The notes under the pieces are model-generated. The model was not told the origin of the DNA. It worked only from the letters and a program-made list of their open reading frames with translations, and made no database searches. From Euprymna scolopes (Eukaryota), in NCBI GenBank assembly GCA_053919585.1, contig CM132791.1: DNA of 64,000 bases. The stretch is one strand, 5' to 3'. Shown piece by piece: positions 3,601 to 50,900 of the stretch; position 1 is the stretch's first letter; every line of letters begins with the position of its first letter. Made by a program: the position numbers and the translations under genes.

Positions 3601-4340
3601 AGGGGTGCTGAGCAAGTGGTTATGCAGAATACCAGACATACAACACAGGCATATCATCAGCTGTCCCTCCATCTACTAGGATTGTGGCCTCAGGATAGCC
3701 CACCGAGGATGAGTACAGGGTCCTTTCCATGCGCGACATGGCACTACAAACATCCAGATATCATACAACTGTTAATGGAGTTTCCGCTCTAAGCGCTACC
3801 AAAGAGTTTCCTGTACTACCAGTCGGGAACAGCAGCCAGGAACTGTCTATCCGGTACCCTCAACCCATCAGATGATGGTCAACCCAATCTGCTTGCACTG
3901 GCATTACAGTATGCAAGCATTCCCAAGTGCCCAGTTTAAGGGTTGGGATGTGTCGGGAGAGGGGAAATACGTTCAATGCCCTAGTCAGGAAACAAGATCG
4001 ACTACCGAGTGTTTCTGTCGACTCTCAGTGGTACGACCTCTACGCTTGGCTAATCGATAAAAGAGTATGGAAGCCGGGCGATAGACAGTGTCTATCTACT
4101 CCTTAAGCAGTTTAGGTTTGCAGACCGGTAATTTGTTTGAGTCACCAGCTCTAAGAAGGTTGTCATCCAAGACTGGAGAGACTTTCCCCCCTCAGGTATA
4201 GCTTCAGAGTTTTCATTCTCCAAGACAGATGACCTGGGAAGATCTACGGGTCCATCAGTACCGAGAGGGTTTACCCCACACCTGGGTCCTAAACAGGTAT
4301 TTCTCCGATCCCGCGAAGGTTGTTAGTGTAGTTACTGGGT
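688..4340 (-). mobile_element. CR1/L2-group LINE (family A), near full length, pseudogenised APE-endonuclease/RT ORF plus putative 5' region
   Basis: Fragments in the expected order: AFTNIR.LRTN...DILALSQT (about 3510), YRSP and VSGDFNAHH (3051-3323), NYRSISL, DISKAFDRVWH, GVPQGSILGPLLFLIFINDL, YADN, IHPCMEYCCHIWAG. ATG at 3571. Many stops and frameshifts. No ORF1 seen upstream; the 4340 boundary is approximate. Confidence 0.9.
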
Positions 4341-5644
4341 TAGTTTATAAAGGTTATATATCTACTGAGAGTATATACTCCTGAAAGTGATTACCGGGAC
4401 ATTTCTATTTCATTGTTTATTACTGAAGGAGACGGTACGTAAGATTTCATGCAGTGGAAGCAGTTATATTAGCAAACATGTCTGTTGGCTTAATGTCTTT
4501 TTTTCCTTTAAATTTATAATTGAGGAAATAAATAAATGCATCAGTAAAAAATAAAAGTAAAATAAAATTATATTCTTTTATTTTTATATTAGCTTAGGAA
4601 TAGGATAATGCGTTACAGAATCGCTTGATATTACGAATAATCTAACAATTGTTGTACGAGCTCTGAATATTTTAGATGGCAGAAGGGGTATGTATATTCA
4701 ATAGATACAAGTAACTTCATTTTTGATAAATACAATACTGTACAGGTGGAAGTAAATTATACGCTATGGCGCCTACATTATGTATAATACAGTAAATAGA
4801 TATCTGGGGAGATTTCCAGTAGATGCGAATGTATGGGGGAGTTATGGGTGTTAAGTAGGTTTCCATTTCTAATAAGGAAATATTCAGCTTTCGTGTATGA
4901 ATCAGGAAATTGTATTTTGCGTTACAGAGTATCGGTTCAGTTTTTGTATTTAAGATTGTAAGGTTAAGGAAGAGAAAGCTATTGCTATGTAATATAGATA
5001 GCTGTAAATCTAAGTACAGACCCTAATTAATAAGTATCTGCCTGGTTAAGAAAAAAACTAGTGCATGCCTTAGGGGTAGAAATGAATGGATGTTTAGTGA
5101 CCATGACTTCCAATCGGTTAGTATGCGATGGTTAAGGGCTGAAAGCTGCGGACCCCCATCCAAATCGTGTGTAATATATGCTTGTTAGAGGCAGCTTGGA
5201 AAGTAGGGCAAATTGTTAGTTTTCAGGAGAGGGTCAAACTTACAGAATACAGTAGAATTCATTTTTAGAATTTTGAGTGTCAAGTGAAGTTTAGTTAGAA
5301 GAATTTTTAATAAATTTAATTTAACATGCAAATCAGACATAGGCAGTTGTCTTGGAGGTAAAGTATATATATTGGATATACATAGAATACAGCAACGGTT
5401 TGTACCGTAATGAGAGAAAAACTATTAGTGTATGGTGTGTCGGGATTAATAGTAAAATACAGTCAGTTTGGTACGGTTCAGTAAAAGTCCTATCGACGTA
5501 GCTATGGTCACTACGTTTCAGTTACAAATAAAATAAAAAGTAAGACAATGTTCAGCGATTTCATGTAGCTAGCAGGGAAGCAACATTTCAAGAAAAGCGA
5601 GCTTATAGTAATATATATTAAGTATACTACTAAAATAAAGGCAT

Positions 5645-6255
5645 GGCTTCCTATATAGGAGAAAATAATTCCTGTTTTTTTTGGAACATTCTAGCCTTTT
5701 TATCGCTAGCTTACTTGAATATAGCATGGGTGCGCAGGGTTTTTGCCCCTTTTAAGTAGGGGGTGTGACACTTTTCATCTTAGTTTGCAAGACAAAAATA
5801 AACACAAATATACATAACTAAAACAAATAGAAAGACAAAATTATAACGAGGCACCATGGTACATTTGTTAGGAGTTAAGATGAGTTAAAAAAAAATTAGT
5901 ACTTAGGTCGTTCCGGTTTGCTTGGCCGAATGACAATATGGCAATATCTTTTACAGGAAGAAGAGGATTTCTATATTTCCGGTTATTTTCTGCACGTGTT
6001 CCTAGCTATATTTATAAAAATAGTCGTTACGTTTATCAGTAAATTTTATATTTATTTTGATTTTTTTTGTTGTTGTGTAGTTAAAGTCCTAGCTTCCTAT
6101 ATAGGAAAAAATGATTCCTGGCTTGTGGAACATTTTGGAATTTTGCCTAGCTTTTTATCGATAGTTTACTTGAACATAGCATGGGTGCGCAGGTGTTTCA
6201 CCCCTTTTAAGTGGGGGGAGACAATTTTCATCTAAGTTTGCAAGACAAAATAAAA
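5645..6255. repeat. Diverged direct duplication of about 160 bp (5645-5800 and 6092-6255)
   Basis: Both copies read gcttcctatatagga...tacttgaa.atagcatgggtgcgcagg...ccccttttaagt...ttttcatct.agtttgcaagacaaaa. Confidence 0.85.
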
Positions 6256-6509
6256 AAAATGAACCCTTATTAGAGTATTCTACAAACTGTAAGTTTGAAA
6301 TTATTCCTGTATCATATATACTAGTCCACTACATTTCATATACTAAATTTGGCATGAATAAAGCGGAAGTAGAAGTATAATATTTATTAATAAAAATAGG
6401 AATCAAACAACAGTGTTTCAGGCTTAAATAATAGTAAATCGGGGAAGTAGTAACTCAACCTATGCTTTGCAGTTTAATTTTTTTTCCTGACATAAAACGT
6501 ATGTATAAT

Positions 6510-7255
6510 TAGGCCTTTATTATTCCTAACATTCATAAATGACCTCCCTGATAAATTGTCTTTGAGATGCGTATATTTACTGATAAAACCACGCTCTATA
6601 ATAGGCACGAAGGGCACGGACACAGATCAAATGAAATGGCAAAAACACTAGAGAAAGACTTTCAATCTGTGGTATAATGGGGGGAAAATGGATAACCACA
6701 TTCTATGCTGCCAAGGCTAAGCATATCTCCTTCAATAACTACGAGAAACCTTCTTAACCATCAACAATTATGGCTTAAGATAAATTACATGAAAGTACTT
6801 CTTTCAACTTCTCAGCTTAAAGTTCACAGGGAAAAAAAGTTGAACAGATACACTGAGAGCATTTCCAGGACCACTACGAGGAAGATGGGCTCGCTGTACC
6901 GTGCTAGAAACTTACTTACCTCTAAAATATCCTGAACATCTACAAGGCCATTATTCGCTCATGTATGCAGTATTGCTGTCGCCATTTTGAGAAGTCCTAG
7001 AACTGTCATCTTAGCTTCAGCCCCTGTCCCATCGATGAAATCTGGCATCCCTCTGGCTGATTTCCAAGTTTTTAAACAGTGGATGATCCGACTAAAGACA
7101 GGTCTTTGTACCCGATCGACGTAAATACCTCCGAAAATCAGGAAAATCCCACACCTGAACTTTAGATATTCCTAGACGTAAGGCCGCCTACTTTAATAGT
7201 TTCCTCCCCAGAGCTGCAATACTTTGAAACTCTCTTCCGTGGATCCGTGCTATGT
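6510..7255 (+). mobile_element. CR1/L2-group LINE (family A), decayed RT 3' fragment
   Basis: LIFINDLPDK at about 6525 and RKMGSLYRARNLLT at about 6880, followed by 3' sequence matching the other family A copies. Confidence 0.8.
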
Positions 7256-9544: not shown

Positions 9545-9676
9545 ATTTTAAATGTCAACAAAATTAAATGAATCAATAATAAGATGGTCAACATTATGAC
9601 TTTTGGAATATAGTTTTTTGTCATTTATTCACTATATATATGTACATATATATGTACATATATATGTACATATATA

Positions 9677-9708
<32 letters not shown>

Positions 9709-10497
9709 CAGCGAGAAATATATATATAATTTTCAGAATGTGAGAGAATATATAATTATTTCCGCAGCCAAAATACTTGATAGCTTTAAAGAATTTCTAA
9801 ACATCGAGATAAAAATTGGAATCTTTAAAACTACTCTGACTAAAACTATCGGATTTTTGCTCCTTATGTATTAGACAAGATAACCTGACGTCGTCCGACA
9901 AAATAATACTTGTTATACGTTTTATCAAAAATATTAATATGAACAGATAATACTGTATTATTTACATAAAACTATGATTCATACTCTGACTATCACTTAA
10001 CATTAATCCGCGCTTACAGACATGCGTTTTGCTAATGAATATAAAATAAGGTTAGAATTTATTCGACATTTCATGCAAATGTATCAGTAATATAATGACT
10101 GAGTGCAGAACACTATAAACCTATAGCTGTGATTATGTGTCGTCCTATCTATATAGGGTTTTGATGAATGTACTGGGTAGGTAGGACGACATCTTATTAC
10201 AACTTGAATACCTATGGATAGAACTTGAATGCTTACTAGACACTCTCCTCGTCTGTGTAAGGTATTTTTCTACAAGGGTTGTCAGGAACACAGGTTTCAG
10301 GATATTTCCACTTGGAAGTATATCTTAATTAAAGATTCAAACTACATAACCACTATTGTTATTACTGAACGTCTGAGAGATGAAATGACATTTTCAAACA
10401 TATCTTCGTTTCATATGCAGACTAAGATTAGGGCTCAGAAAAAGGCTTCTTCATATGTAAGTAGTTTGACTGAAAAAAATAGAACATTTTCTCGCGT

Positions 10498-11220
10498 TTA
10501 AATACGGGTAACGGAAGCTAGTTCTAATAAATAAATACGGGTAGCAGAAGCCAGTTCTAATAAATAAATACGGGTAACAGAAGCCAGTTCTAATAAATTA
10601 ATACGGGTAACAGAAGCCAGTTCTAATAAATTGATACGAGTAACAGAAGCCAGTTCTAATAAATTAATACGGGTAACAAAAGACAGTTCTAATAAATTAA
10701 TACGGGCAACAGAAGCCAGTTCTTATAAATTAATACGGGTAACAGAAGCCAGTTCTTATAAATTAATACGGGTAACAGAAGCCAGTTCTAATAAATTAAT
10801 ACGCGTAAAAGAAGCCAGTTCTAATAAATTGATACGAGTAACAGAAGCCAGTTCTAATAAATTAATACGGGTAACAGAAGCCAGTTCTAATAAATTAATA
10901 CGGGTAACAGAAGCCAGTTCTAATAAATTAATACGCGTAAAAGAAGCCAGTTCTAATAAATTGATACGGGTAACAGAAGCCAGTTCTAATAAATTAATAC
11001 GGGTAACAGAAGCAAGTTCAAATAAATAAATACCGGTAACGGAAGTCAGTTCTAATAAATTAATACGGGTAACAGAAGCCAGTTCTAATAAATTAATACA
11101 GGAAACTGAAGCCAGTTCTATTAAATTAGTACGGGTAACAGAAGCCAGTTCTAATAAATTAATATGGGAAACAGAAGTCAGTTCTAATAAATTAATATGG
11201 GAAACAGAAGCCAGTTTTAA
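10498..11220 (+). repeat. 33-bp minisatellite, about 22 copies
   Basis: Unit aatacgggtaacagaagccagttctaataaatt. Confidence 0.95.
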
Positions 11221-11908
11221 TCATCCTGAATGGATTTGCTCTAAGCACCAATCTTGTTGTCAATTCCTTGCCTGATCCGCCAGTAAAGCAACTGCAATAT
11301 TCTCGGATGAAAAGAATTCCAGATTCTCAAATTTCGCATATTCATTGCGATTATAATTTTTTACTCTTTTACCCATAAAACAAGATAGATGAACAACAAT
11401 ATTAAGAATTCTATTTAACATAAGATTATAAGGAGTTGAATAGCGACGATGCCTGTGCAGAGTACATTAAAATTTAGGAAAAATTATTCAGTCAGAATGC
11501 ACGGAAAACAAAAAGGGAATATCTTACTCTAGTGATCCGCAAGAAAAACTATTAGAAACGACGATTTTCCAGCATATAACGAACACAACAGTGAATGGAT
11601 CTGGAGTTCGTGTTCTTCAGGTTAGTTGGGAAAAGGTACCTTGAGAAGGCATGAATGCTAATATTTTTTCAGGGCATTCTCCATTATAGTACGTGTAAAA
11701 CAGACAGTGATACTACATTGTTACGATGGATCAAAGTTTAAAGTTTTATAAATAGTGCTGGTAATATTAAATTGGAGATTCATTTTGCGCCATGTCTACG
11801 AAGAGCTAGTGGTAGATGTGATCATTATGTTGGAAAAGCGTCAACATATAAGATACACTCTGATGTATTTTTAGCACGATAGAAAGATCATAACATGTTT
11901 CTCACAGC

Positions 11909-12009
11909 TTGGTTATTGTCATAAAGTATTTGGTTATTGTCATAAATAAAGTATTTGGTTATTGTCATAAATAAAGTATTTGGTTAATGTCATAAATAAA
12001 GTATTTGGT
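11909..12009 (+). repeat. 25-bp minisatellite, about 4 copies
   Basis: Unit ttggttattgtcataaataaagtat. Confidence 0.9.

Positions 12010-37471: not shown

Positions 37472-37474
<3 letters not shown>
36713..37474 (-). mobile_element. Complete non-autonomous Helitron of about 760 bp
   Basis: The minus strand has a 5' TC...ataaagctgaacgtctgtgtg end and a 3' GC-rich dyad (cccagtaaacggcggg) followed by CTAG. Flanked on both sides by (TA)n. Homologous to 1-506. Confidence 0.8.
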
Positions 37475-37532
<58 letters not shown>

Positions 37533-37539
<7 letters not shown>

Positions 37540-37710
37540 TTTTCACAGCCAAAATAATATTGCAGCCCAAAAGTGCCTAGAAATCTTACAAACTGGAAGA
37601 CCAAGACCTGAGTTTCGCCCTCATTTGGGCTCAATTGTTAGACACATCCGCGCTCATGGTTTGAACCCCGAACCTCTTGCATGCTAGGCGAGCACTCTAA
37701 CAACTGCTAT
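37533..37710 (-). mobile_element. tRNA-Ala(AGC)-derived SINE-like unit with a decayed hammerhead motif
   Basis: Minus strand: tagcagttgttagagtg ctcgc CTAGCAT gcaag aggttcgg GGTTCAAACC (anticodon arm and B box). This is followed by ctaa caattga GCCC aaatga GGGC GAAA C tcag G TC ttgg. Confidence 0.65.
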
Positions 37711-38499
37711 TGATAAGAAAATATTTGTTTTACTTGATTAAAATTAATTAAACATAGATTATATCTGTAGTATATAAATATTTTTTTATAATGAAACAAT
37801 TTATTAATTTTTGCTGATTTACGATTTTTTCATTGCCGGTTTTTATTTTGCAAATTAAAAATAATCCGATAATCTTTTTTGATAATGAAAAAATGTGCTG
37901 ACAATTAAGTGATTTAAAATATTTGAATATTTTCTTAAATGAACAATAAATTAAAATCAATTTACTAAATAATCATTTTTTTTCAAGATTTATTTACACA
38001 ATTTACTAATATTTATTGATATAATTGGATAATTTTGCATTGTTCTTCTAATGTTTTATATTCATTTTATTTCTTCTGTCAAAAAATTATAATCAATATA
38101 ATAATCGTTTTTTATAATGAGAACATTTATAAATATTTAAAATCTTAAAAAGTTCAACAAAATGCCAATTGCATTTTTATTAGTGCATAAGGCACATCTG
38201 ATTGAGTTGAAATAAAATATTTTTTGCTTAAATTCTAGTATCTTTCTTTTTATAGTTTAATATTAATAGTTTTTGGTAAATTTTATGGTTAAACATTTTG
38301 TTGAACATCTTTCTGTTGAGGCCGAAATCCTTTTTCAAGAAAATACCTAACTTTTTAAAATTCTATTCATCAACAACGTAAGCAACAATAAAAATAATGG
38401 AATTATATTTATTAATTAATAGAACATGCTAATGATCACAGGAAAAGTATTACATAAAAAAAATTTACAGAAATTTGTTTTAAATTCTGAATTTAAGTG

Positions 38500-39022
38500 A
38501 TTCATAAAAGTGCTATCGTTCGCCTGCAGGGATACAGTTATAGCCCCATACCACGCTGATTGGGAGGTTAGCACTCAAGTTTTTGCTATTTCGATTGGAT
38601 ATATGGTCTGATTTTTCTCAATTATTTGTTTCTTTTATATTTTTCAAAAGAAATGCCAATATTGATGGACGACATTTTGGAATGAAAATTAAAATTATAT
38701 GAAATATTGGTGTCACTGATAATATTTCACTTGTTATTATTCTAAATAATGCAAGTAAAATGCCCAAATCGACTTTCATAAAAGTGAAGAATATCTGGTT
38801 TTACAATGAAATTTCTGCAAAAAAAATTTATTGAAATATATAATTTCGGAATTAATTCATTGAGGATCGTAATTTTAAAATAAAAATCTATTTGTTTGAA
38901 CACACACATATTCCATTGCAGTAGAAAAATTCTATTTCTAGTGGCTTTTTGCAAATGCTCAGTATTTTGTTGACAATATTTTCGAATTGAAGAGTCAGTT
39001 TTGAGATAAATTTTGAATTGCT
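38500..39022 (-). pseudogene. Diverged duplicate of the USP C-terminal half and its 3' flank
   Basis: 38641-39022 aligns to 39332-39728 (ILHFYESRFGHFTCII versus ILHTLNRVDFGHYTCIV). 38497-38555 aligns to about 39175-39235. Confidence 0.85.
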
Positions 39023-39324: not shown

Positions 39325-40290
39325 TTATATTTTTTCAAAAAAAATGCCAACAATATTGGACATTTTGGAAGGAGAATTGACATTATTAGAATAGTTAGTG
39401 TCACTGACAATATTCCACTTAATATTATTTCTAACAATGCAAGTATAATGCCCAAAATCGACTCTATTCAAAGTGTGCAGAATAGCTGTTTTTACTTTGA
39501 AATTTGTTCCAAAAATATTTTGTTTTTTTGTACTGAAATTCATAATTCCAGCATTAATTCGCCGAGGATTATAATTTTCAAACATAAATCTATTTATTTG
39601 AACACACAAATATTTCATTGCAGTAGGAAACGTTCTAGTGACATTTTCCAAGTGCTCAGTATTTTGCTTACATTTGATACAATGTTTGAGCACTGAAGCA
39701 TCAGTTTTGAGCAAACTTTTAAATTGCTGTCGACCATCAGTAGGATGAAGTTGAATAACTAATCTCTGTGGTATTCCAGCAATCTGCAAGGTTTGGAACC
39801 CACAGCCAACTTTAAAGGTGCAATTACATTCACTATCTTGTAGTCTTTGGCAGTTTTGTTTGTGTATTCTAAGACATTTCATCACTTTACTTTCTTCAAA
39901 AGTGAATAATTGTTTGGCACTGTCAGGGCACTTGTTTATCAAAAATTCCCAAAATGCAATAGCACATTCTTGTTGGCCACTATTAAAAAAAACGCCTCCG
40001 ATTGATTCTCTAAGATCAGCAACACTGTGAGTGCCAGGGACAAGCAATCTTTTTAATTGCTGAATTGGCAAATCAATGTTTGGAATGCTTTTAATGATGT
40101 TAGACAACAAAGGAAGGTGGTAAATTGTCTGAACAATACTGTTAGCAAAACAAGAATTTCTTTCATTGATCAATTTGAGGTCCAAATTATTTTGAGAAAT
40201 TGAATTGTCTATTTTCAGCCATTTTCTATTTGGACTATTATGTTTTTGCTTCAAATCATGATCTATAACGATTGTTTTTTTTTTTTCGTT
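39325..40290 (-). CDS. USP / peptidase C19 (ubiquitin C-terminal hydrolase)-like domain, probably the C-terminus of the transposon polyprotein
   Basis: Uninterrupted reading frame. Cys box LINERNSCFANSIVQ, GQQECAIAFWEFL, CIKC, YLCVQINRF, His box AILH...FGHYTCIVR...WNIVSD. Confidence 0.8.
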   Translation of the reverse strand, partial: NEKKKTIVIDHDLKQKHNSPNRKWLKIDNSISQNNLDLKLINERNSCFANSIVQTIYHLPLLSNIIKSIPNIDLPIQQLKRLLVPGTHSVADLRESIGGVFFNSGQQECAIAFWEFLINKCPDSAKQLFTFEESKVMKCLRIHKQNCQRLQDSECNCTFKVGCGFQTLQIAGIPQRLVIQLHPTDGRQQFKSLLKTDASVLKHCIKCKQNTEHLENVTRTFPTAMKYLCVQINRFMFENYNPRRINAGIMNFSTKKQNIFGTNFKVKTAILHTLNRVDFGHYTCIVRNNIKWNIVSDTNYSNNVNSPSKMSNIVGIFFEKI

Positions 40291-42110
40291 TATAAGTCTG
40301 TTTGTACAATGACAAACTTTGAGGCATAACAGAACAAGGAGGAAGCGGTGGCAAATCAACCCTGTCTCTTTTGGCCCTCAATCTATTATATTCAGTCCAT
40401 GCACTTTTGTTACACATGGTCAATTTATGAGGGTCAAGGTCAATCAAATAGACATTGCACAGCTTTCTAGCACGTGACAAAGCTACATAGGCCATTCCAT
40501 CTGAAAATACATCAGATCCCAAGTCAACAATGATACCATCGACTGAAATACCTTGGGTTTTGTGGACAGTTAAAGCATAGCTGAGTGACAAAGGTATTTG
40601 ATATCTAGTCACAAAGAGTCCAGGAGAAAGTTCATAGTCAGCTTGCACAAATTCAACATTGACTGCATATGATCAAATTTTACAGTCACAGCAACAACTT
40701 CGCCATCTTTCATTTGTATTTCAGTGACTGTACCCATTGTACCATTGCAAAGTCCTTTTTCAATATCAATATTTCGACGCAACATGCATCTAGCACCAAT
40801 TCCAATTTAAAGCACAGTTTCAAGTCCAGCTGTGTCAGAAATCTTTTTAAGGTTAGAAGTTTTTGGTGTCTGTTTTGATTTTTTTTTTTGTTACGGTTTT
40901 TTGTCTTAAGTTGGAATCAGTTGCTGAAATTTCAATGATATGAATATTATTTTTTTTCAACATTTTATAATTCACTTCCTCAGCAGATTCATTTGTGGGT
41001 ATAATGCAAATAATATGCATTTTCTTTTGCAAATTTTGCAAAAGATCAGTAACTTGATCAATATTTGCTTTTTGTTTAGGATTGATTCGATGCCTTTTCA
41101 AGATCTCAATATCCTGATCAGTTGGTGACCCAAGTCTTATTCTGTTAAGAATATTAACAAAGTTTTCATTGTCATCTTTTTGTCGCACATTTATGGTCAA
41201 TTCATCATAATCGAAATATGACCACAAATTTATACCAGCAATTCCCAAATTTGATTTTCTAGCATCTTGAATAGATATTTTGGAAAATACAGGTTTTTCA
41301 TTAACAGGTGGAAGCTGAAATAAATCACCAAATGCAACAATTGACATGTTTGCAAATGGATACACTTGTTTCCTAATATCACCAAAAACATCTTGCAAAC
41401 GTTGGTGAATAAATGCTAATTGCAAGTGACTAACCATGCTTATTTCATCAATAATGAATAATCTCGCATATCCAAGCATGGTTCTCAAACTTTTTATTTT
41501 ATCCTTTGATAATGGTTCATATTTAGGTGTAGAACCATGCTGCACATTTAGTTGAAAGACTCTATGGCATGTAGATCCTTTCAAAATGTAAGCACTGACA
41601 CCAGTAGGAGCACAAATAACTACACTGGGTCCATTGATGGCAGGATATGTGAGAGTAATTTTATCTGCCAGTGCATTGATCAGAAAAGATTTGCCCACAT
41701 CCACAAAACCATTAATAAATTTGAGAATTTGTGGACAATCGTCACAATTGCACCTGTGAATAGGGTTTTCCTCATTCCAATGAAGATTTTGTTGCTCAAG
41801 TTTGGAAATAATTTCATTATAAATTTCTTTTTGAATGAAATTCAATTTTTGCTCATTTTCTAAAACTTGAACTTCAGTGACATGTCTGATTTGAAGCATA
41901 TTCAAATCAGCTTCATTTTTATCTGCCTCTTTAGCCATATTAGGATCGCAATCAATTTGATCATCATCAGCGTTATTTTCATTTTCATAATTTTTAGATT
42001 TTCGCTCTATTTTTTTGCTTATTTCAATAGCATCTTTAATTTTTTTCTTAATACTTTCATAATTTGTCATTTCAGACAAATATGGAGCATTTTGATGTAA
42101 TGATTGCTCA
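40256..42110 (-). pseudogene. PIF1-family SF1B helicase of the Helentron, disrupted
   Basis: Altered Walker A GFVDVGKS, APTGVSA, GSTCH, IIDEISMV, FGDLFQLPPV, ELTINVRQ, LNRIRLG, TAGLETVL*IGIGARCMLRRNID..GLCNG (in-frame stop at about 40808), LSYALTVHKTQG, GMAYVALSR. Frameshifts near 40880 and 40700. Confidence 0.9.
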
Positions 42111-42123
42111 TATGATTTACAGA

Positions 42124-42983
42124 TTACAAATTGGCATATTTTGTTGTAACATAAACCTCAGTGTGAAATTCATTTTCATTTGAAAAGGATTCATTGTAAA
42201 GGTCAGAAATAGTAGCATCCCTGCTAACCTGGTAAATTAACTCACTATATATTGACCAGTCCCCTTCAAGTGTTGCGATGTCATATTTGTTAAGCCATGT
42301 TCCAATCGACAATAATCGATATATTTTTCTGATCACTGTTCTCAGGTGTTGCGAGTGTGGTGACAAGAGTTTCGGCAGGGCCAGCTTGTCCGTGCAATCA
42401 CTTTGGCCACAGCAATAAATTCTATCAGAATGCATACCTTTGCAACTTTGGAAACTATCCAATTTCTTCCTCATTTGAGCAATTGTCAAATTCGGACTCA
42501 AATCAGACAAATTGTTATGCAATCTTTTAGCATATTCCAATTTCTGAGCTGAGTCTGGACAGCCATCTTCGATTCTACACAGACGAGTCATTGATATTCT
42601 GTAGTCACTGTTATTAATTTGATTTTCATTGTGTCGATGAAAATTAGCATCTTTGCGTGACATTTCGAATTTGCAAGTAAATTTAGATGCTTTTTTTCTA
42701 TGTTTATTTTTATATTTGTTATAATATGCTTTTGCACAAATTTTTTCTCTATTTTTTTTATAATACTGGGCCATTTTCGCATGCATTTTTTCTCTATTTT
42801 TATTGAAATATTTTTTATTTGACTCTTTTTGCTTTTTTTATAAGTATCATTAGTTACCGCTTTGAGTTTTTTTTTATAATTCTGAACTCTTTGTTTTATT
42901 TTATCTTTATTTTTTCAATAATATTCAGCTTTTCTAGCTTTTTCAGCAATTTTATCATATACTTTTATATTGCCATCATTCAT
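42124..42983 (-). pseudogene. Lys-rich N-terminal region of the Helentron polyprotein
   Basis: ATG at 42983. One stop and one homopolymer frameshift join it to ORF 42786-42124. Repeated Y(Y/F)xKN(K/R)(D/E)K motifs, then a Cys/His-containing segment. Confidence 0.6.
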
Positions 42984-43764
42984 AATATATTCTTGACAGG
43001 CCACAAAATCACCGCAATACCACATTCACTCCAGGAGGGGTGTCCTACGTAAGTCCCAGGAGTCCTACGTAAGTCCCTTATAGTAAAAATGTTGGTGCGC
43101 ATGCACTAATTGTAACACGCTATTATTTTCTTAATAATATAAAAGAAAATAAGAATTTTATTGACACAGTATTTGTAAACAAACAACAACAAAAAAAATA
43201 GTACGCTTACGTGTTGAAAATAATGCAAGAAAATGTTACATGTAATATTTTACACAAATACTGAACAGTAGCCCTCCCCTCTCTGTCTGTCTGTCTGTCT
43301 GTCTCTCTCCCTCTCTCTGTGTGTTGCTGTTATTATGGTAGTACGAATAGTGGTTTGTTTACGTTGTAGTTGAAAATATATCTTGCATTATTTACAAAAA
43401 GTTGTAAATAATGCAAGAAAATGTTACAGCCAGTTACAAAATTAAAAATGATAATAATATATTCATAATATATTCTTGACAGGCCACAAAATCACCGCAA
43501 TACCACATTCACTCCAGGGGGGGGTCCTACGTAAGTCCCAGGAGTCCTACGTAAGTCCCTTATAGTAAAAATGTTGGTGCGCATGCACTAATTGTAACAC
43601 GCTATTATTTTCTTAATAATATAAAAGAAAGTAAGAATTTTATTGACACAGTATTTGTAAACAAACAACAAAAACAAAAAATAGTACGCTTACGTGTTGA
43701 AAATAATGCAAGAACATGTTACATGTAATATTTTACACAAATACTGAACAGTAGCCCTCCCCTC

Positions 43765-43796
<32 letters not shown>

Positions 43797-44459
43797 CCTC
43801 TCTGTCTGTGTTGCTGTTATTATGGTAGTACGAATAGTGGTTTGTTTACGTTGTAGTTGAAAATATATCTTGCATTATTTACAAAAAGTTGTAAATAATG
43901 CAAGAAAATGTTACAGCCAGTTACAAAATTAAAAATGATAATAATATATTCATAATATATTCTTGACAGGCCACAAAATCACCGCAATACCACATTCACT
44001 CCAGGGGGGGCCTACGTAAGTCCCAGGAGTCCTACGTAAGTCCCTTATAGTAAAAATGTTGGTGCGCATGCACTAATTGTAACACACTATTATTTTCTTA
44101 ATAATATAAAAGAAAGTAAGAATTTTATTTACACAGTATTTGTAAACAAACAACAACAAAAAAATAGTACGCTTACGTGTTGAAAATAATGCAAGAAAAT
44201 GTTACATGTAATATTTTACACAAATACTGAACAGTAGCCCTCCCCTCTCTGTCTGTCTGTCTGTCTCTCTCCCTCTCTCTGTGTGTTGCTGTTATTATGG
44301 TAGTACGAATAGTGGTTTGTTTACGTTGTAGTTGAAAATATATCTTGCATTATTTACAAAAAGTTATAAATAATGCAAGAAAATGTTACAGCCAGTTACA
44401 AAATTAAAAATGATAATAATATATTCATAATATATTCTTGACAGGCCACAAAATCACCG
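42978..44459. repeat. Three near-identical tandem units of 475-487 bp plus the start of a fourth
   Basis: Units start at 42978, 43461, 43948 and 44423 (attcataatatattcttgacaggccacaaaatcaccg). A further partial diverged copy lies at about 44500-44620. Confidence 0.95.
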
Positions 44460-45111
44460 GTAGTAATGTAACGGATAATCAAAACAGGGGAAAAATCAGT
44501 TATGTAATATTTTACACAAATACTGAACAGTAGCCCCCCTCTCTGTCTGTCTGTCTCTCTCTCTCTCTCCCTCTCTCTCTGTGTTGCTGTAATAGTGGTT
44601 TGTTTAGGTTGTCGTGGAAAACTCTGATGAAACTAAAATCCGGCAATTTTTATTTTTTTAATAACGGTATTAGTATCAAAATATCTGAAAATGATATCTT
44701 AAACTAAACAGAAGAATGTCAAGGTAATTATTGTACTATTTCAGAAAATGTTCAATAAGTATGTCTCAAGTAAATTAATTTTTTATTTTTTCTACCGGTA
44801 CCCTACGCTGGATTACACAATAGTAGTCTCTAAGTAACATTTTGTTTGTCTCGCAGTTACTTGCGAGACTAATTTATATATAAACTAACATTAAAAAAAA
44901 CACTAACCTAGTTTTAAAACAAATCAAGAAATTAAATAGAGCACAAACAAAGGAACAGTTCAACCAGAGGCCAAATAGGCATTTGTCTGATAAATGCATG
45001 CTCATTGACTGATAGGAAGGGTCCGGTGGATACTAGAAAGCTGATTAGCTAACTAAAATCTCAATAGAAGAGGAACGTATAAAAACGATAAACAACCATA
45101 GAATTCGCGCA

Positions 45112-46436: not shown

Positions 46437-46570
46437 NNNNNNNNNNNNNNNNNNNNNNNNNNNNNNNNNNNNNNNNNNNNNNNNNNNNNNNNNNNNNNNN
46501 NNNNNNNNNNNNNNNNNNNNNNNNNNNNNNNNNNNNNNNNNNNNNNNNNNNNNNNNNNNNNNNNNNNNNN
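46437..46570. other. Assembly gap (134 N)
   Basis: Run of N. Confidence 1.
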
Positions 46571-47249: not shown

Positions 47250-50200
47250 ACATGGAACGATTAGCCGAGTTTACGAAAACGATATTGTTAGCATTGGCAG
47301 CGCAGCAAAGTCAGATGGGATTTTTTTTCAAAAAGAGCAGTTAAAACAAAGTGACGTATTAAGACAATATTAATAAAACAAGAAGAAAAGAAGGATTGTC
47401 GATTCACTCCGGAAGGAATTGCAAATTCTCTAACAGAATGTTTATATGATCCAAAGAGTGGCTTAACATTTCCAGCATATTATCGTAGATACGAAAATAT
47501 TTTTTCCAAACGACGAATAAAAAATATTTTACTTTTGCAAAAACTGGGTTCCCATGAAAATACCAAGTATACAAATTTTATACTCCCAAGGAAACCCGAA
47601 ATATTTCTTTTAAAGAGGCTATAGAAACGTTATCAAACATTTTCGAGGAACGGATAGCCACATGCGGGTTATTTAAGTTGAAAGACCTAAAAGAAGACAT
47701 GTTTAAATGCTTGATATTTGTGCAAGGGTTAACATCCTCGAATAATAAAGAGATTCCTTCTAGGATATTGTTCATTATGAACCAAGACATAGAAATAACC
47801 TTACAGAAAGTTACTGAGGAATGCCAGAAATTGTTAAATTTAAAACACGATAATACTAGTATCGAATGGAAAAATGTTGACAAAATACAAAGGGTAAAGC
47901 AAGGTGACCACTATGTAAAAAGATACTGTAAGAAGTGTGCAGGAAAGAATCACTTCACAAAAAAGTGCTACTTCAAAAGCAAAATATGCTAGAAGTGCGG
48001 GCGTAAAGGACACAAGTCAACAGTATGCAAAAAAGAGAAATACTGTAAACCTGAAATAAAGACCATTGATTCTAAAAAAGAGTCCATGTATGGTAAAAAA
48101 AGGAAATATATTGAAGTTAGAATCAATGGCCGGAAAGTAAACTGCCTTTTTGATACTGAAAGTGACATATCTTTAATTGAGGAAACAACATGGAAGAGAA
48201 TTGGTTCTCCAAAGCTGCAAAACACAAAGAAAATTGCCAGAGGAATGTCTGGAAATAGATTAAAATTAAAGGGTGAATTTTATACTAATGTGACCCTGAA
48301 TGAAAAGACGTTAAAAACTAAAATATATGTGATACCCGGAAAAATTCTAATCTATTCGGTATAGATTTGATGATACTTTTCAATTTATGGGAGAAACCAA
48401 TAAACTCATTTTGCAAAAGAGTAAATGTAACAGGATCTGAAAGTCCAAAACTGCAAGGAAGATTTGTTAGGGATTTAAAGAAGGATTTAAAAAATGTATT
48501 TCCTGACGGTGTGGGTTGCTGCACTAAAACGGAAGTGAAATTTGACTGTAAAGTGAAGCTAAACCGGCGTTTATACCAAAAAGGAAGGTTTCGTATTCGG
48601 CATTAGAAACAACCGAGAAAGAATTAAATAGAATCGAAGAAATTGGAGTAATAAAAAGGTGTAGTACTCTGAATGGGCATCGCCCACAGTTTATGTGAAA
48701 AAGAAAAAAAATCAAGGTATGTCGAGATTTTTCGACGGGACTTGATGATTCCTTAAAGGATCATAACTATTCACTCTCTACCCCTTAGGAAATATTTTCT
48801 AAGTTAAATGGAGGAAAACTTTTCACAAACTTGACTTGTCAGAAGCATATTTGCAGGTCACTGTCCACGAAGAGTGTTCTAAATACCTGACAATGAATAT
48901 ATATAAAGGATTATTTTTCCCTAAAACGATTGCTGTTTGGGTTGAAACTAGCACCAAATTTATTCTAACAAAGTACGGATGCCTTGCTAGCAGGCTTGGA
49001 TTTTTCAATGGCTTATTTAGACATTTTGATAAGAAGCAAAAATGTTGAAGGACATTAAAACCATATTCGGAAGGTATTCGAGAAAATAGAAGACTATGGA
49101 TTTAAAGTGGCCCTCGAAAAATGTAATTTTGGTATGGACAAGATTGAATATTTGGGACAAATAATTGATTGGAAATGTAGAAGATCTAACCCAAATAGAA
49201 CCGAAGCAATTAGAGACATTTCTAGACCAGACAATGTAGTGAAGATACAATCATTCTTGGGTCTAGCAAACTACTATAATTCTTATATCCCAAATATGCC
49301 TGAACTAAGAGCACCATTAAATGAATTATTGAAGAAGAATACAACATGGCTCTGGACAAAAGAAAGTGAGGAAGCATTCCAAAAAATTAAAATATGTTTG
49401 TTATCGGATCTAGCGTTAGCACATTACGATCCGAAAAAGGATCTAATTGTAGCGGCAGATTCGAGCGAATACGATTTAGGAGCGATGCTTCTACACAGAA
49501 TGGAAAATGAATCTACTAAACTAATTTCTCACGCCTCAAGGGTTTTATTACCCGCTGAAAGAAAATACAGCCAGATCGAAAAAGTGGGTCTGGCGATTGT
49601 GTATACCATGAGAGAATTTCATAGATTCATTCATAGAAGATCTTTCGTCTTCGAAACGGACCATAAACCATTACTATCGATTTTTTGTTCGAAAAAAGGG
49701 ATTCCTAATCTTACGGCAAATAGGTTACAGAGATGGAGTATTATTTAGCTCAATTACGATTTCAAAATGAAACACCTAGCATCTAGTAAAATTGCAGATG
49801 GTTTGTTGACATCCATCCCCAGTAAAACTGCATTTGAAGAAACTGTTATAGCAGCACTAAAAGAAGAAAATGAACTGACATATATATTAATAAATACTTC
49901 CGGTTACACTTGATGAAATAAAGAAAGCAACGAAAACAAACAAATATATTCATAAAATAAAATAAAAAACAAGTTGTACAATACGATAACAATAGAAAAG
50001 GATTAAAAGTGTTTCCATATTCTGTGTGATGAAACCCTCATGTACGCAGACAGAGTGGTAACACCGGATGTATTACAAAAGAAAATCCTAAAGGAATTCC
50101 ACATGGGGCATCCTGGAATCTCCAGAATTAAGGCCGTAATGAGAGGATTCACATACTGGCCTGGAATTTAACAGGACATTGAGGAAATGGTCAAATTATG

Positions 50201-50900
50201 TAGAGATTGCCAACTAGCCGCAAGATCTCCTCCCATACGGACACAACCTTGGCCTAAAAACGATGTACCCTGAACACGCCTTAATATAGATTACGCAGAA
50301 CCTCTGAAGGATTATAATTACCTAGTGATCGTAGATAGTATGTAAAAATGTCCAGAAAATTTTAAATACAAACACACTACAACGGCAAACAAAATAAAAG
50401 CGCTGGATGAGGTATTTAGTCGGTTTGGAGTTCCGAAAACAATTGTTAGGGATAATGTTCAGAGCCCAAGAATTCAAGCGCTACTGTGAGACATTGGTTA
50501 TTGAGCCTCGATCAAAGGGACAAGCGGAAGGATTTGTCGATACTTTTAAACAAGGTTTAAAAAAGTATAATAACATCGACACATTCTTGGTAATATATAC
50601 GATAAAACCAAATTCAAATACAAATGCTAAATTATCGCCAGCTGAACTTATGGTGGCCAGGAAGGTATGTTCGGTGTTCGACCGGTTAATCCGTAGAGAA
50701 AAAGTAAAAATAAAAATATCAAGGATAATGTAAGGACGGGGATAAAGTTTTCTTCAAAAATTATCGGGCAGGGAATAGTTTTTGGGAAGAAGGCATACTC
50801 TCAAGAAGAATTGTGAGTATGGTTTACATTATGAAAGGACATACTGTTTTCCACACAAAAAAACATATTAACCAACTGAGACCCCGATACATAGAAACAG
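47250..50900 (+). pseudogene. gag-pol pseudogene of the Gypsy element
   Basis: Gag YDPKSGLTFPAYYRRYE; two CCHC knuckles (CKKCAGKNHFTKKC and C.KCGRKGHKSTVC); protease LFDTESDISLI; RT SEWASP, DLSEAYLQV and a damaged YLDD; RNase H YSQIEK...TDHKPL; integrase HMGHPGI...C..C and NIDYA. Confidence 0.9.

What the first reader, a model, noticed from the sequence alone, without database searches (positions are those of the whole stretch)
39325..42110. Rolling-circle transposon with a USP/C19 deubiquitinase-like domain fused to its PIF1 helicase
Seen: the helicase C-terminus (HKTQG...VALSR...EYNRLR...KQTYKRKKK) and the USP frame (KKKTIVIDHDLK...NSCFANSIVQ) overlap across one poly-A run at about 40275-40287, so a 1-nt slip makes a single protein. 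The USP frame is open to its stop codon and keeps the Cys box, QQ box, a CxxC pair, LxVQINRF and the GHY...W..SD His box. Known: Helentrons usually carry an AP endonuclease after the helicase and sometimes an OTU protease, and other DNA transposons carry Ulp1/C48 SUMO proteases. I do not know of a characterised Helentron family with a C19 USP in this position, but I cannot search to confirm that. Inference: a captured deubiquitinase could stabilise the transposase or counter ubiquitin-dependent silencing or repair (for example H2A-Ub or PCNA-Ub).
Basis: partly seen in the sequence, partly recalled or inferred. Interest (0 to 1): 0.85.

Follow-up and report, generated by a model that had tools for sequence, protein, structure and literature searches.

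The report
Helitron transposase with fused USP deubiquitinase
The window holds a broken copy of a very young, abundant rolling-circle (Helitron-like) transposon whose intact copies encode one 2,231-residue protein that joins the replication nuclease, a PIF1 helicase and a USP-type deubiquitinase domain; the fusion is real, but USP domains in this group of elements were already reported in a 2024 survey.

Summary

**The window copy.** Window 39325-40290 (minus strand) encodes a USP/C19 domain (Pfam UCH, E 3.9e-10). A PIF1 helicase C-terminus lies directly upstream, and one poly-A run (40275-40286) separates the two frames. The run is A12 here and A8 in intact copies. The copy runs from 44871 to about 37701 and is dead:
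- its Rep domain is deleted;
- the helicase carries two more frameshifts;
- its Walker A motif is mutated;
- its 3' terminus is missing.

**Intact copies.** At least 16 copies elsewhere in this 5.9-Gb genome carry a fully open 2,256-codon frame. That frame reads DUF6570, Rep (Helitron_like_N), PIF1, then UCH. Four such copies differ by only 2-4 of 2,433 bases. Poly-A RNA libraries hold contigs that cross the helicase-USP junction without a splice.

**The USP domain.** The catalytic Cys, His and Asp are conserved, and the predicted fold matches USP2, USP14 and USP21.

**Prior knowledge.** The same single-protein architecture exists in a boll-weevil protein and in a colinear 2,245-residue metagenomic protein. 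The HELIANO survey (NAR 2024) already lists UCH as a domain of HLE2 elements. I therefore class this as a new member of a known kind. DUB activity and its role in transposition are untested.

First readers of this scan noted the same family on two other pieces of this genome.

The parts
44838..44871 (-). 5' terminus of the element. It contains an 8-bp stem hairpin (GTCTCGCA / TGCGAGAC) at element bases 3-24.
   Evidence: This is an exact match to the 5' end shared by four full copies. The motif occurs 174 times in the genome against 0 for the reversed control. Hairpin fold.
42978..44459 (-). 5' untranslated tandem array: 483-bp unit, 3.1 copies.
   Evidence: Tandem Repeats Finder gives 97% matches. 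The array is homologous to the 5' repeats of full copies.
42124..42786 (-). Remnant of the N-terminal part of the transposase ORF. Internal deletions remove element bases 3657-4118 and 4626-7098, and with them the DUF6570 and Rep domains.
   Evidence: The same 2,473-base skip with AAT between the two sides is present in contigs of four RNA libraries. This shows a deletion-derivative subfamily, not a private lesion of this copy.
40853..42079 (-). PIF1 helicase N-terminal half. The Walker A motif reads GFVDVGKS here and GFGGVGKS in intact copies.
   Evidence: Pfam PIF1 E 6.6e-20. The G1440V and G1441D changes are shared by 30 copies. A +1 frameshift in a poly-A run lies at about 40889.
40256..40785 (-). 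Helicase 2B domain and C-terminal domain, split into two frames by a 7-base deletion at about 40669.
   Evidence: Pfam Pif1_2B_dom and UvrD_C_2. The 7-base deletion is seen. It is shared by most of the 30 other sampled genomic copies and by contigs of RNA runs X17 and X18.
40275..40286 (-). Poly-A run at the helicase-USP junction. It is A12 here and A8 in intact copies, and it encodes the basic linker KRKK.
   Evidence: The intact ORF reads through as ...YKQTYKRKKTIVIDHD....
39325..40290 (-). USP / peptidase C19 domain, open to its stop codon. Catalytic codons: Cys 40150-40152, His 39448-39450, Asp 39400-39402. One 3-base insertion adds a Phe.
   Evidence: - Pfam UCH E 3.9e-10.
- Conserved catalytic columns in a 42-sequence alignment.
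- AlphaFold2 mean pLDDT 86.2.
- Foldseek hits to USP2, USP14 and USP21 at E about 1e-17.
- Residue coordinates.
38587..38975 (-). Diverged (about 78% identical) duplicate of the 3' end of the USP coding region, lying in the 3' untranslated region.
   Evidence: Self-comparison of a full copy aligns element 9548-9943 with 10244-10626. Window matches.
37701..38345 (.). Rearranged 3' region. 38040-38345 is the single surviving arm of a 310-bp inverted repeat. 37701-38039 is part of the loop in flipped orientation. The terminal arm and the 3' terminus are absent.
   Evidence: In full copies the arms are element 10869-11178 and 11685-11990, 98% identical. The 3'-end motif is found only on the plus strand, at 38312-38346.

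Best explanation
**What it is (shown).** Window 44871 to about 37701 (minus strand) is an immobile, non-coding deletion derivative of a rolling-circle transposon about 12 kb long. The family belongs to Helitron-like element group 2 (HLE2, the Helitron2/Helentron side) but lacks the AP endonuclease.

Intact family members carry one intron-less gene for a 2,231-residue protein. Its parts, in order, are:
- an N-terminal region with no Pfam match;
- DUF6570;
- the HUH Rep nuclease;
- a PIF1-type SF1B helicase;
- a short basic linker (KRKK, encoded by an A8 run);
- a C-terminal USP (peptidase C19) domain.

The family is very young. Its sequence is present in poly-A RNA libraries, and it has spawned an abundant Rep-less subfamily to which the window copy belongs.

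**How it most likely works (inferred).** The USP domain is probably an active cysteine deubiquitinase tethered to the transposase. It would remove ubiquitin from the transposase itself, or from host replication and repair factors at the site of rolling-circle transposition. That would protect them from degradation or from ubiquitin-dependent signalling. Other HLE2 lineages carry VTD or OTU deubiquitinase domains, which may fill the same niche.
For: **Single ORF and architecture**
- ORFs of 2,231 residues in two copies.
- Pfam order DUF6570 543-678, Helitron_like_N 778-962, PIF1 1435-1636 plus 2B and UvrD_C_2, UCH 1951-2211.
- At least 16 copies with a 2,256-codon open frame.

**Youth and abundance**
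- 124 scored USP copies at 96-100% identity out of 1,749 first-look candidates.
- 174 copies of the 5' terminus motif against 0 for the control.
- Intact copies differ by 2-4 of 2,433 bases.

**Element ends**
- Ends were defined in four full copies, with unrelated flanks and no clear target duplication.

**RNA**
- Contigs from four oligo-dT or poly-A libraries (two studies) cover the stretch.
- One 2,041-base contig spans the helicase-USP junction with no joint.

**USP identity**
- The family profile matches USP12, USP2 and USP46 at E about 1e-40.
- AlphaFold2 mean pLDDT 86.2, pTM 0.83.
- Foldseek matches USP2, USP14 and USP21 at E about 1e-17, TM about 0.7.
- The catalytic Cys, His and Asp columns are 90-100% conserved.

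**Long-term retention of the fusion**
- P0021 (2,245 residues) is colinear with this protein at 31% identity and has the same four domains.
- Anthonomus grandis XP_050314924.1 has Rep, PIF1 and UCH.
- The nearest USP relatives, including the Octopus bimaculoides protein at 39% identity, carry a helicase C-terminus just before the USP.

**Precedent**
- Helentron VTD domains are active deubiquitinases in vitro (PMC9741609).
Against: - No enzymatic data exist for any HLE2 USP domain.
- The predicted USP-ubiquitin complex gave only weak support: score 0.46, best control 0.00. USP-ubiquitin complexes are solved, so the pass may come from memory.
- Within-genome substitutions do not show significant purifying selection on the USP. 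Singleton dN/dS is about 0.48 in the USP against about 0.89 in the helicase, which is not significant, and most sampled copies are dead.
- RNA-library contigs do not strictly prove transcription, because no silent control stretch was laid.
- The QQ box reads QQEC, not the usual QQDA, and the first zinc-ribbon Cys pair is irregular.
- The T/T insertion rule of HLE2 could not be settled, because AT occurs on both sides of the ends.
Confidence: 0.8

Rival explanations
1. The USP is a passenger. On this view it is a host gene fragment picked up by Helitron-style gene capture that happens to lie in frame and contributes nothing to the element.
For: Helitron-like elements are known to capture host gene fragments. 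HELIANO itself treats such extra domains as captures. No significant purifying selection was detected among copies within this genome.
Against: - The same Rep-PIF1-UCH order is kept in proteins only 31% identical overall and in a beetle.
- The catalytic residues are conserved across 42 homologues at 19-37% identity to this USP.
- The nearest relatives of this USP are almost all helicase-linked.
- A useless passenger would not survive that much divergence with an intact reading frame and intact catalytic residues.
Confidence: 0.08
2. The domain is kept but is not a ubiquitin hydrolase. It could be a ubiquitin-binding pseudo-enzyme, or be specific for another modifier such as NEDD8, an ISG15-like protein or SUMO. 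It could also be a self-processing protease that cuts the polyprotein.
For: - Sequence identity to solved USPs is only 12-16%.
- A single-sequence search of the PDB found nothing.
- The QQ box and zinc ribbon are atypical.
- The complex with ubiquitin was only weakly supported.
- Helentron VTD domains also cleave NEDD8.
Against: - The Cys, His and Asp of the triad and the oxyanion Asn are all in place.
- No LRGG-like cleavage motif is visible in the helicase-USP linker (read directly).
- The USP fold, including the fingers, is predicted with high confidence.
Confidence: 0.12
3. The frameshift in the window copy is a homopolymer sequencing error, so this copy really encodes a fused helicase-USP.
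For: I did not lay reads on this exact copy.
Against: - Even with A8, this copy lacks the Rep domain, has a +1 and a -7 frameshift in the helicase, a mutated Walker A motif and no 3' terminus.
- The point therefore does not change what the copy is.
- With more than 100 copies at 96-100% identity, short reads could not be assigned to this locus.
Confidence: 0.1

Closest known systems
HLE2 Helitron-like elements carrying a UCH domain (HELIANO survey, subgroups c and d; PMC11417382)
   Same: DUF6570, Rep and PIF1 together with a Pfam UCH domain, and no AP endonuclease. The paper lists UCH among 20 domains stably included in HLEs and says it is almost exclusive to HLE2.
   Different: - The paper's subgroups c and d come mostly from lungfish and axolotl. 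This host is a mollusc, as shown by the RNA-run labels and the nearest relative in Octopus.
- The paper states that domains other than four named ones lie in separate ORFs. Here, and in P0021 and the weevil protein, the UCH is in the same ORF as RepHel.
- I could not place this family on their tree.
Helentrons with VTD (herpes-tegument-like) and/or OTU deubiquitinase domains (PMC9741609)
   Same: A rolling-circle transposase ORF that carries a papain-type cysteine deubiquitinase domain. The VTD domains were shown to cleave ubiquitin chains, and the authors proposed that they protect proteins needed for transposition.
   Different: - The DUB class is different (USP/C19, not VTD or OTU).
- Those elements also carry a C-terminal AP endonuclease, and this family has none.
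- Nothing here has been tested biochemically.
Anthonomus grandis XP_050314924.1 (uncharacterized protein LOC126749270, 1,996 residues) and the metagenomic protein P0021 (2,245 residues)
   Same: The same single-protein order: (DUF6570), Helitron_like_N, PIF1, UCH. P0021 is colinear with this protein over about 1,900 residues.
   Different: They share only about 23-31% identity with this protein. They come from an insect and from an unnamed sample. They carry no transposon annotation in the source.
Cellular USPs (USP12/USP46, USP2, USP21, USP14)
   Same: The USP fold and the catalytic Cys box and His box. The family profile gives E about 1e-40, and Foldseek gives E about 1e-17 with TM about 0.7.
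   Different: - Identity is 12-16%.
- The domain is compact, about 280 residues.
- It is fused to a transposase and not embedded in a host regulatory protein.
- No specific cellular orthologue could be named; the tree is unresolved.

Membership tests
Helitron-like elements, group HLE2 (Helitron2/Helentron side) | HUH Rep nuclease domain with two catalytic tyrosines | tested here: met
   Intact copies match Helitron_like_N at E 7.1e-26, residues 778-962. The HVH motif and the Y-x-x-x-Y motif (YITSY) can be read in the ORF. The window copy itself has this region deleted.
Helitron-like elements, group HLE2 (Helitron2/Helentron side) | PIF1-like SF1B helicase fused C-terminal to Rep | tested here: met
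   PIF1 at E 1.7e-21, plus Pif1_2B_dom and UvrD_C_2, in the same ORF. The window copy also has these domains.
Helitron-like elements, group HLE2 (Helitron2/Helentron side) | DUF6570 upstream of Rep, the HLE2 marker proposed by HELIANO | tested here: met
   PF20209 at E 3.1e-18, residues 543-678. The marker claim is in PMC11417382.
Helitron-like elements, group HLE2 (Helitron2/Helentron side) | No target-site duplication; insertion between T and T | tested here: inconclusive
   Four full copies share their ends and have unrelated flanks. One boundary placement gives T on both sides. However, AT adjoins both ends in all copies, so an A/T site or a 2-bp duplication cannot be excluded.
Helitron-like elements, group HLE2 (Helitron2/Helentron side) | Terminal hairpin and asymmetric terminal inverted repeats | tested here: inconclusive
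   The 5' end has an 8-bp stem hairpin, and there is an 11-base inverted match between element bases 26-36 and 11937-11947. The 3' end lies in a 310-bp inverted repeat. This was not compared with curated HLE2 termini.
Helentron in the strict sense | AP endonuclease domain after the helicase | tested here: not met
   There is no Exo_endo_phos hit in the 2,231-residue ORF at E up to 0.01. No other ORF of 150 residues or more lies on the coding strand of the element. The USP occupies that position.
USP / peptidase C19 (Pfam UCH PF00443) | Profile match above the curated threshold | tested here: met
   The window copy scores 40.2 bits and the intact copy 30.9 bits, against a cut-off of 23.9. The family profile matches solved USPs at E 4.9e-40.
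USP / peptidase C19 (Pfam UCH PF00443) | Cys box with the catalytic Cys, and His box with the catalytic His and Asp/Asn | tested here: met
   C44, H277 and D293, plus N39, are 90-100% conserved across 42 homologues. They are also present in the window copy.
USP / peptidase C19 (Pfam UCH PF00443) | USP fold (palm, thumb and fingers) | tested here: met
   AlphaFold2 mean pLDDT 86.2, pTM 0.83. At least 415 PDB chains match at E up to 0.001, and the best-ranked are all USP catalytic domains. The single-sequence model was useless, with pLDDT 31.
USP / peptidase C19 (Pfam UCH PF00443) | Binds ubiquitin in the S1 site | tested here: inconclusive
   Predicted complex with the host's own ubiquitin: weak support, score 0.46 with best control 0.00. 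The three runs agree in at least 88% of contacts, and the partner's pLDDT is 83. In calibration the mark was reached by 51 of 78 solved complexes and 2 of 108 mismatched pairs, but passes at 0.60 or under are unreliable and may come from memory.
USP / peptidase C19 (Pfam UCH PF00443) | Isopeptidase activity on ubiquitin conjugates | not testable with these tools
   This needs purified protein and Ub-AMC, Ub-PA or di-ubiquitin assays.

The most novel reading that the evidence does not exclude
This mollusc family is a currently active natural HLE2 transposon. Its fused USP is an obligatory, catalytically active module that took the position held by the AP endonuclease in Helentrons. If so, rolling-circle transposition in animals generally depends on an element-encoded deubiquitinase, supplied as USP, VTD or OTU in different lineages. 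A further possibility is that the A8 run at the junction works as a slippage switch that sets the ratio of RepHel-USP to USP-less RepHel.
Probability: 0.25. Interest if true: 0.65.

Novelty: new member of a known kind. Interest (0 to 1): 0.35.

Why it matters
Helitron-like elements repeatedly acquire deubiquitinase domains: OTU, VTD, and USP as seen here. No one has shown what these domains do for transposition.

This family offers unusually good material for that question:
- at least 16 natural copies have a fully open frame;
- the intact copies read here are almost identical to one another;
- the sequence is present in poly-A RNA libraries;
- the USP domain is compact, about 280 residues, and models with high confidence.

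It also corrects a detail of the published survey. In this family, in a beetle protein and in a metagenomic protein, the UCH domain is part of the RepHel protein itself and not a separate ORF.

For genome annotation, these copies should be masked as transposon sequence. They should not be called host USP or PIF1 genes, as has happened for the Octopus and weevil proteins labelled 'uncharacterized'.

Tried and rejected
- **Word-indexed protein search.** Restricting the search to the USP region of the full-length protein found nothing. The exhaustive representative search was needed instead.
- **Single-sequence PDB search.** phmmer of the USP against the PDB found nothing at E up to 0.01.
- **Single-sequence structure prediction.** The AlphaFold2 model was unusable, with pLDDT 31. 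Both problems were solved with the 42-sequence alignment.
- **USP phylogeny.** A tree of USP domains, built to ask whether helicase-linked USPs share one origin, was unresolved. Twenty of 39 inner branches were open and branches were long. The only firm result is that this USP pairs with the Octopus protein at SH-aLRT 99.
- **Selection test.** Singleton substitutions in 34 copies gave dN/dS of about 0.48 in the USP and about 0.89 in the helicase, which is not significant. The few shared variants mostly mark the dead subfamily.
- **USP-ubiquitin complex.** The verdict was weak support only (0.46 against 0.00), so I do not count it as evidence.
- **HELIANO supplements.** The supplementary tables that would list the species with UCH are not held as text.
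- **N-terminal region.** Pfam on the first 553 residues found no domain.
- **Host-gene reading.** I considered and rejected a host USP gene at this locus. The copy number and the constant position rule it out.
Full report
**1. Checking the observation**

ORF 39325-40359 carries the USP frame. The two frames overlap across a run of 12 A at 40275-40286.

Pfam confirms both domains above their curated thresholds:
- UCH (PF00443): E 3.9e-10, 40.2 bits against a cut-off of 23.9, on 39325-40290.
- PIF1: E 6.6e-20, on 40853-42079.
- Pif1_2B and UvrD_C_2 / Herpes_Helicase on the two fragments in between.

The Cys box, QQ box, CIKC pair and His box are all present. The catalytic codons are Cys 40150-40152, His 39448-39450 and Asp 39400-39402.

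**2. What the window copy is**

I searched the window's own assembly with the USP domain. The assembly is 5.9 Gb in 925 contigs, and hits fell on contigs numbered up to C46. The first look gave 1,749 candidates. All 124 that were scored are 96-100% identical at the protein level and lie on many chromosomes. Sixteen of them sit in an open frame of 2,256 codons.

Two such copies were read through. Each has a single ORF of 2,231 residues from the first ATG. In it the helicase runs straight into the USP through the linker ...YKQTYKRKKTIVIDHD..., with no frameshift.

Pfam places the domains on this ORF as follows:

| Domain | Residues |
|---|---|
| DUF6570 | 543-678 |
| Helitron_like_N (Rep) | 778-962 |
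| PIF1, with 2B and UvrD_C_2 | 1435-1860 |
| UCH | 1951-2211 |

No AP endonuclease was found, and there is no second gene on the coding strand. Four full copies share about 11,990 bp between unrelated flanks.

Aligned to a full copy, the window copy shows these lesions:
- It keeps the 5' terminus (44838-44871) and a 483-bp tandem array (42978-44459).
- It lacks element bases 3657-4118 and 4626-7098. The second deletion removes DUF6570 and Rep.
- It has a +1 frameshift at about 40889.
- It has a 7-base deletion at about 40669.
- It has A12 where intact copies have A8 at the junction.
- It has a 3-base insertion inside the USP.

Its 3' end is also rearranged. Only one arm of the element's 310-bp inverted repeat remains, followed by part of the loop in flipped orientation. 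The true 3' terminus is missing.

This copy is dead for several independent reasons.

**3. The family**

The Rep deletion, the 7-base deletion and a mutated Walker A motif (GFGGVGKS changed to GFVDVGKS) are shared by most of the 30 sampled copies. The Rep-deletion joint also appears in contigs of all four RNA libraries examined. The window copy therefore belongs to an amplified non-autonomous subfamily.

The autonomous copies differ from one another by only 2-4 of 2,433 bases. This points to very recent activity. The 5' terminus motif occurs 174 times in the genome, against none for the reversed control. In some copies it is duplicated in tandem about 42-59 bases apart.

Contigs from four oligo-dT or poly-A RNA libraries (two studies) cover nearly the whole 5.9-kb stretch that I laid. 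Two of the runs are labelled mollusc metagenome. One 2,041-base contig crosses the helicase-USP junction without a joint. This is consistent with transcription of an unspliced RepHel-USP message. It is not proof, because DNA carry-over was not controlled for.

The host is a mollusc according to these labels. The nearest protein relative is from Octopus bimaculoides. From the genome size and the 46 large contigs, I infer a decapodiform cephalopod.

**4. Is the domain really a USP?**

A single-sequence search of the PDB and a single-sequence fold prediction both failed. The exhaustive search of 1.84 billion representative proteins gave only 84 hits.

A 42-sequence alignment of these hits keeps the catalytic Cys, His and Asp, the oxyanion Asn and the zinc-ribbon cysteines at 90-100%. 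Its profile matches solved USP12, USP2, USP46 and USP21 at E about 1e-40.

With this alignment, AlphaFold2 gives mean pLDDT 86.2 and pTM 0.83. Foldseek finds at least 415 PDB chains at E up to 0.001. The top 50 listed are all USP-family domains at E about 1e-17 to 1e-14, with TM about 0.61-0.71.

A predicted complex with the host's own ubiquitin gave only weak support: score 0.46, best control 0.00. I do not count this as evidence.

**5. Is the fusion kept by selection?**

Within the genome the copies are too similar, and mostly dead, so the test has little power. Singleton dN/dS was about 0.48 in the USP and about 0.89 in the helicase, which is not significant.

The stronger argument is comparative:
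- P0021 (2,245 residues, from a public read assembly) has the same four domains and is colinear with this protein at 31% identity.
- A boll-weevil protein, XP_050314924.1, has Rep, PIF1 and UCH.
- The closest USP relatives that have any N-terminal extension carry a helicase C-terminus directly before the USP. This includes the Octopus protein.

A reading frame and a catalytic triad that survive this much divergence argue against a useless passenger.

**6. Mechanism**

Shown: the element encodes one protein that joins Rep, helicase and a USP-fold domain with an intact triad.

Inferred: the USP is an active deubiquitinase that works beside the transposase. It would keep the transposase, or host replication and repair factors, free of ubiquitin during rolling-circle transposition. 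This is the same role proposed for the VTD deubiquitinases of Helentrons, which were shown to be active in vitro (PMC9741609).

The linker has no LRGG-like motif, so self-processing seems unlikely.

**7. Comparison with what is known**

The HELIANO survey (PMC11417382) already lists UCH among 20 domains stably included in Helitron-like elements. It describes UCH as almost exclusive to HLE2 and enriched in subgroups c and d, which come mainly from lungfish and axolotl. No other paper in the library links Helitrons with USP or UCH domains.

The association is therefore published, although no one has characterised it. What this case adds:
- a mollusc host;
- a very young family whose sequence is found in poly-A RNA libraries;
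- clear evidence that the UCH is part of the RepHel ORF, whereas the survey says domains other than four named ones lie in separate ORFs.

The family is not a Helentron in the strict sense, because the AP endonuclease is absent.

First readers of this scan noted the same family on two other pieces of this genome.

**8. Verdict**

This is a new member of a known kind, of moderate interest. Its main value is as material for testing why rolling-circle transposons carry deubiquitinases.

Noticed in passing
window 47678-50733 (+): Remains of an LTR-type retrotransposon lie next to the Helitron copy. One ORF has an aspartyl protease (48086-48364) and another an RT-linked RNase H (49107-49748; Pfam RT_RNaseH_2, E 4.2e-26). 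The frames are broken.
   Followed up: partly
full copy, element bases 10869-11178 and 11685-11990 (e.g. L033 with its flanks); window 37701-38345: The element ends in a 310-bp inverted repeat (98% identical arms, about 500-bp loop). This is far longer than the short 3' hairpins usually described for Helitron-like elements. In the window copy the loop is flipped and the terminal arm is lost, as if by recombination or strand switching at the palindrome.
   Followed up: partly
window 38587-38975; element bases 10244-10626: The 3' untranslated region holds a diverged (about 78% identical) duplicate of the last 400 bases or so of the USP coding region.
   Followed up: no
genome, e.g. G000:C11:31040849 and 31040891; C1:138203828 and 138203879: In several copies the 34-base 5' terminus motif is present twice in tandem, 42-59 bases apart. 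These duplicated ends might reflect how rolling-circle transposition starts or ends.
   Followed up: no
L032:3867-6341 joint; window about 42122-42126: The Rep-less deletion derivative (a 2,473-base skip with AAT inserted) has the highest contig word-depth of all parts in two poly-A RNA libraries: about 230, against 20-100 elsewhere. The non-autonomous subfamily may dominate this family's sequence in those libraries.
   Followed up: no
window 37474-37710: The homology to the element stops at 37701. I did not examine that unit.
   Followed up: no
window 46437-46570: A run of 134 N, which is an assembly gap or a masked stretch. I left it as it is.
   Followed up: no
P0001 (Octopus bimaculoides XP_052827946.1); P0026 and P0087 (Anthonomus grandis): Public proteins labelled 'uncharacterized protein' are fragments or full copies of RepHel-USP transposases. 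In other words, transposon genes have been annotated as host genes.
   Followed up: partly
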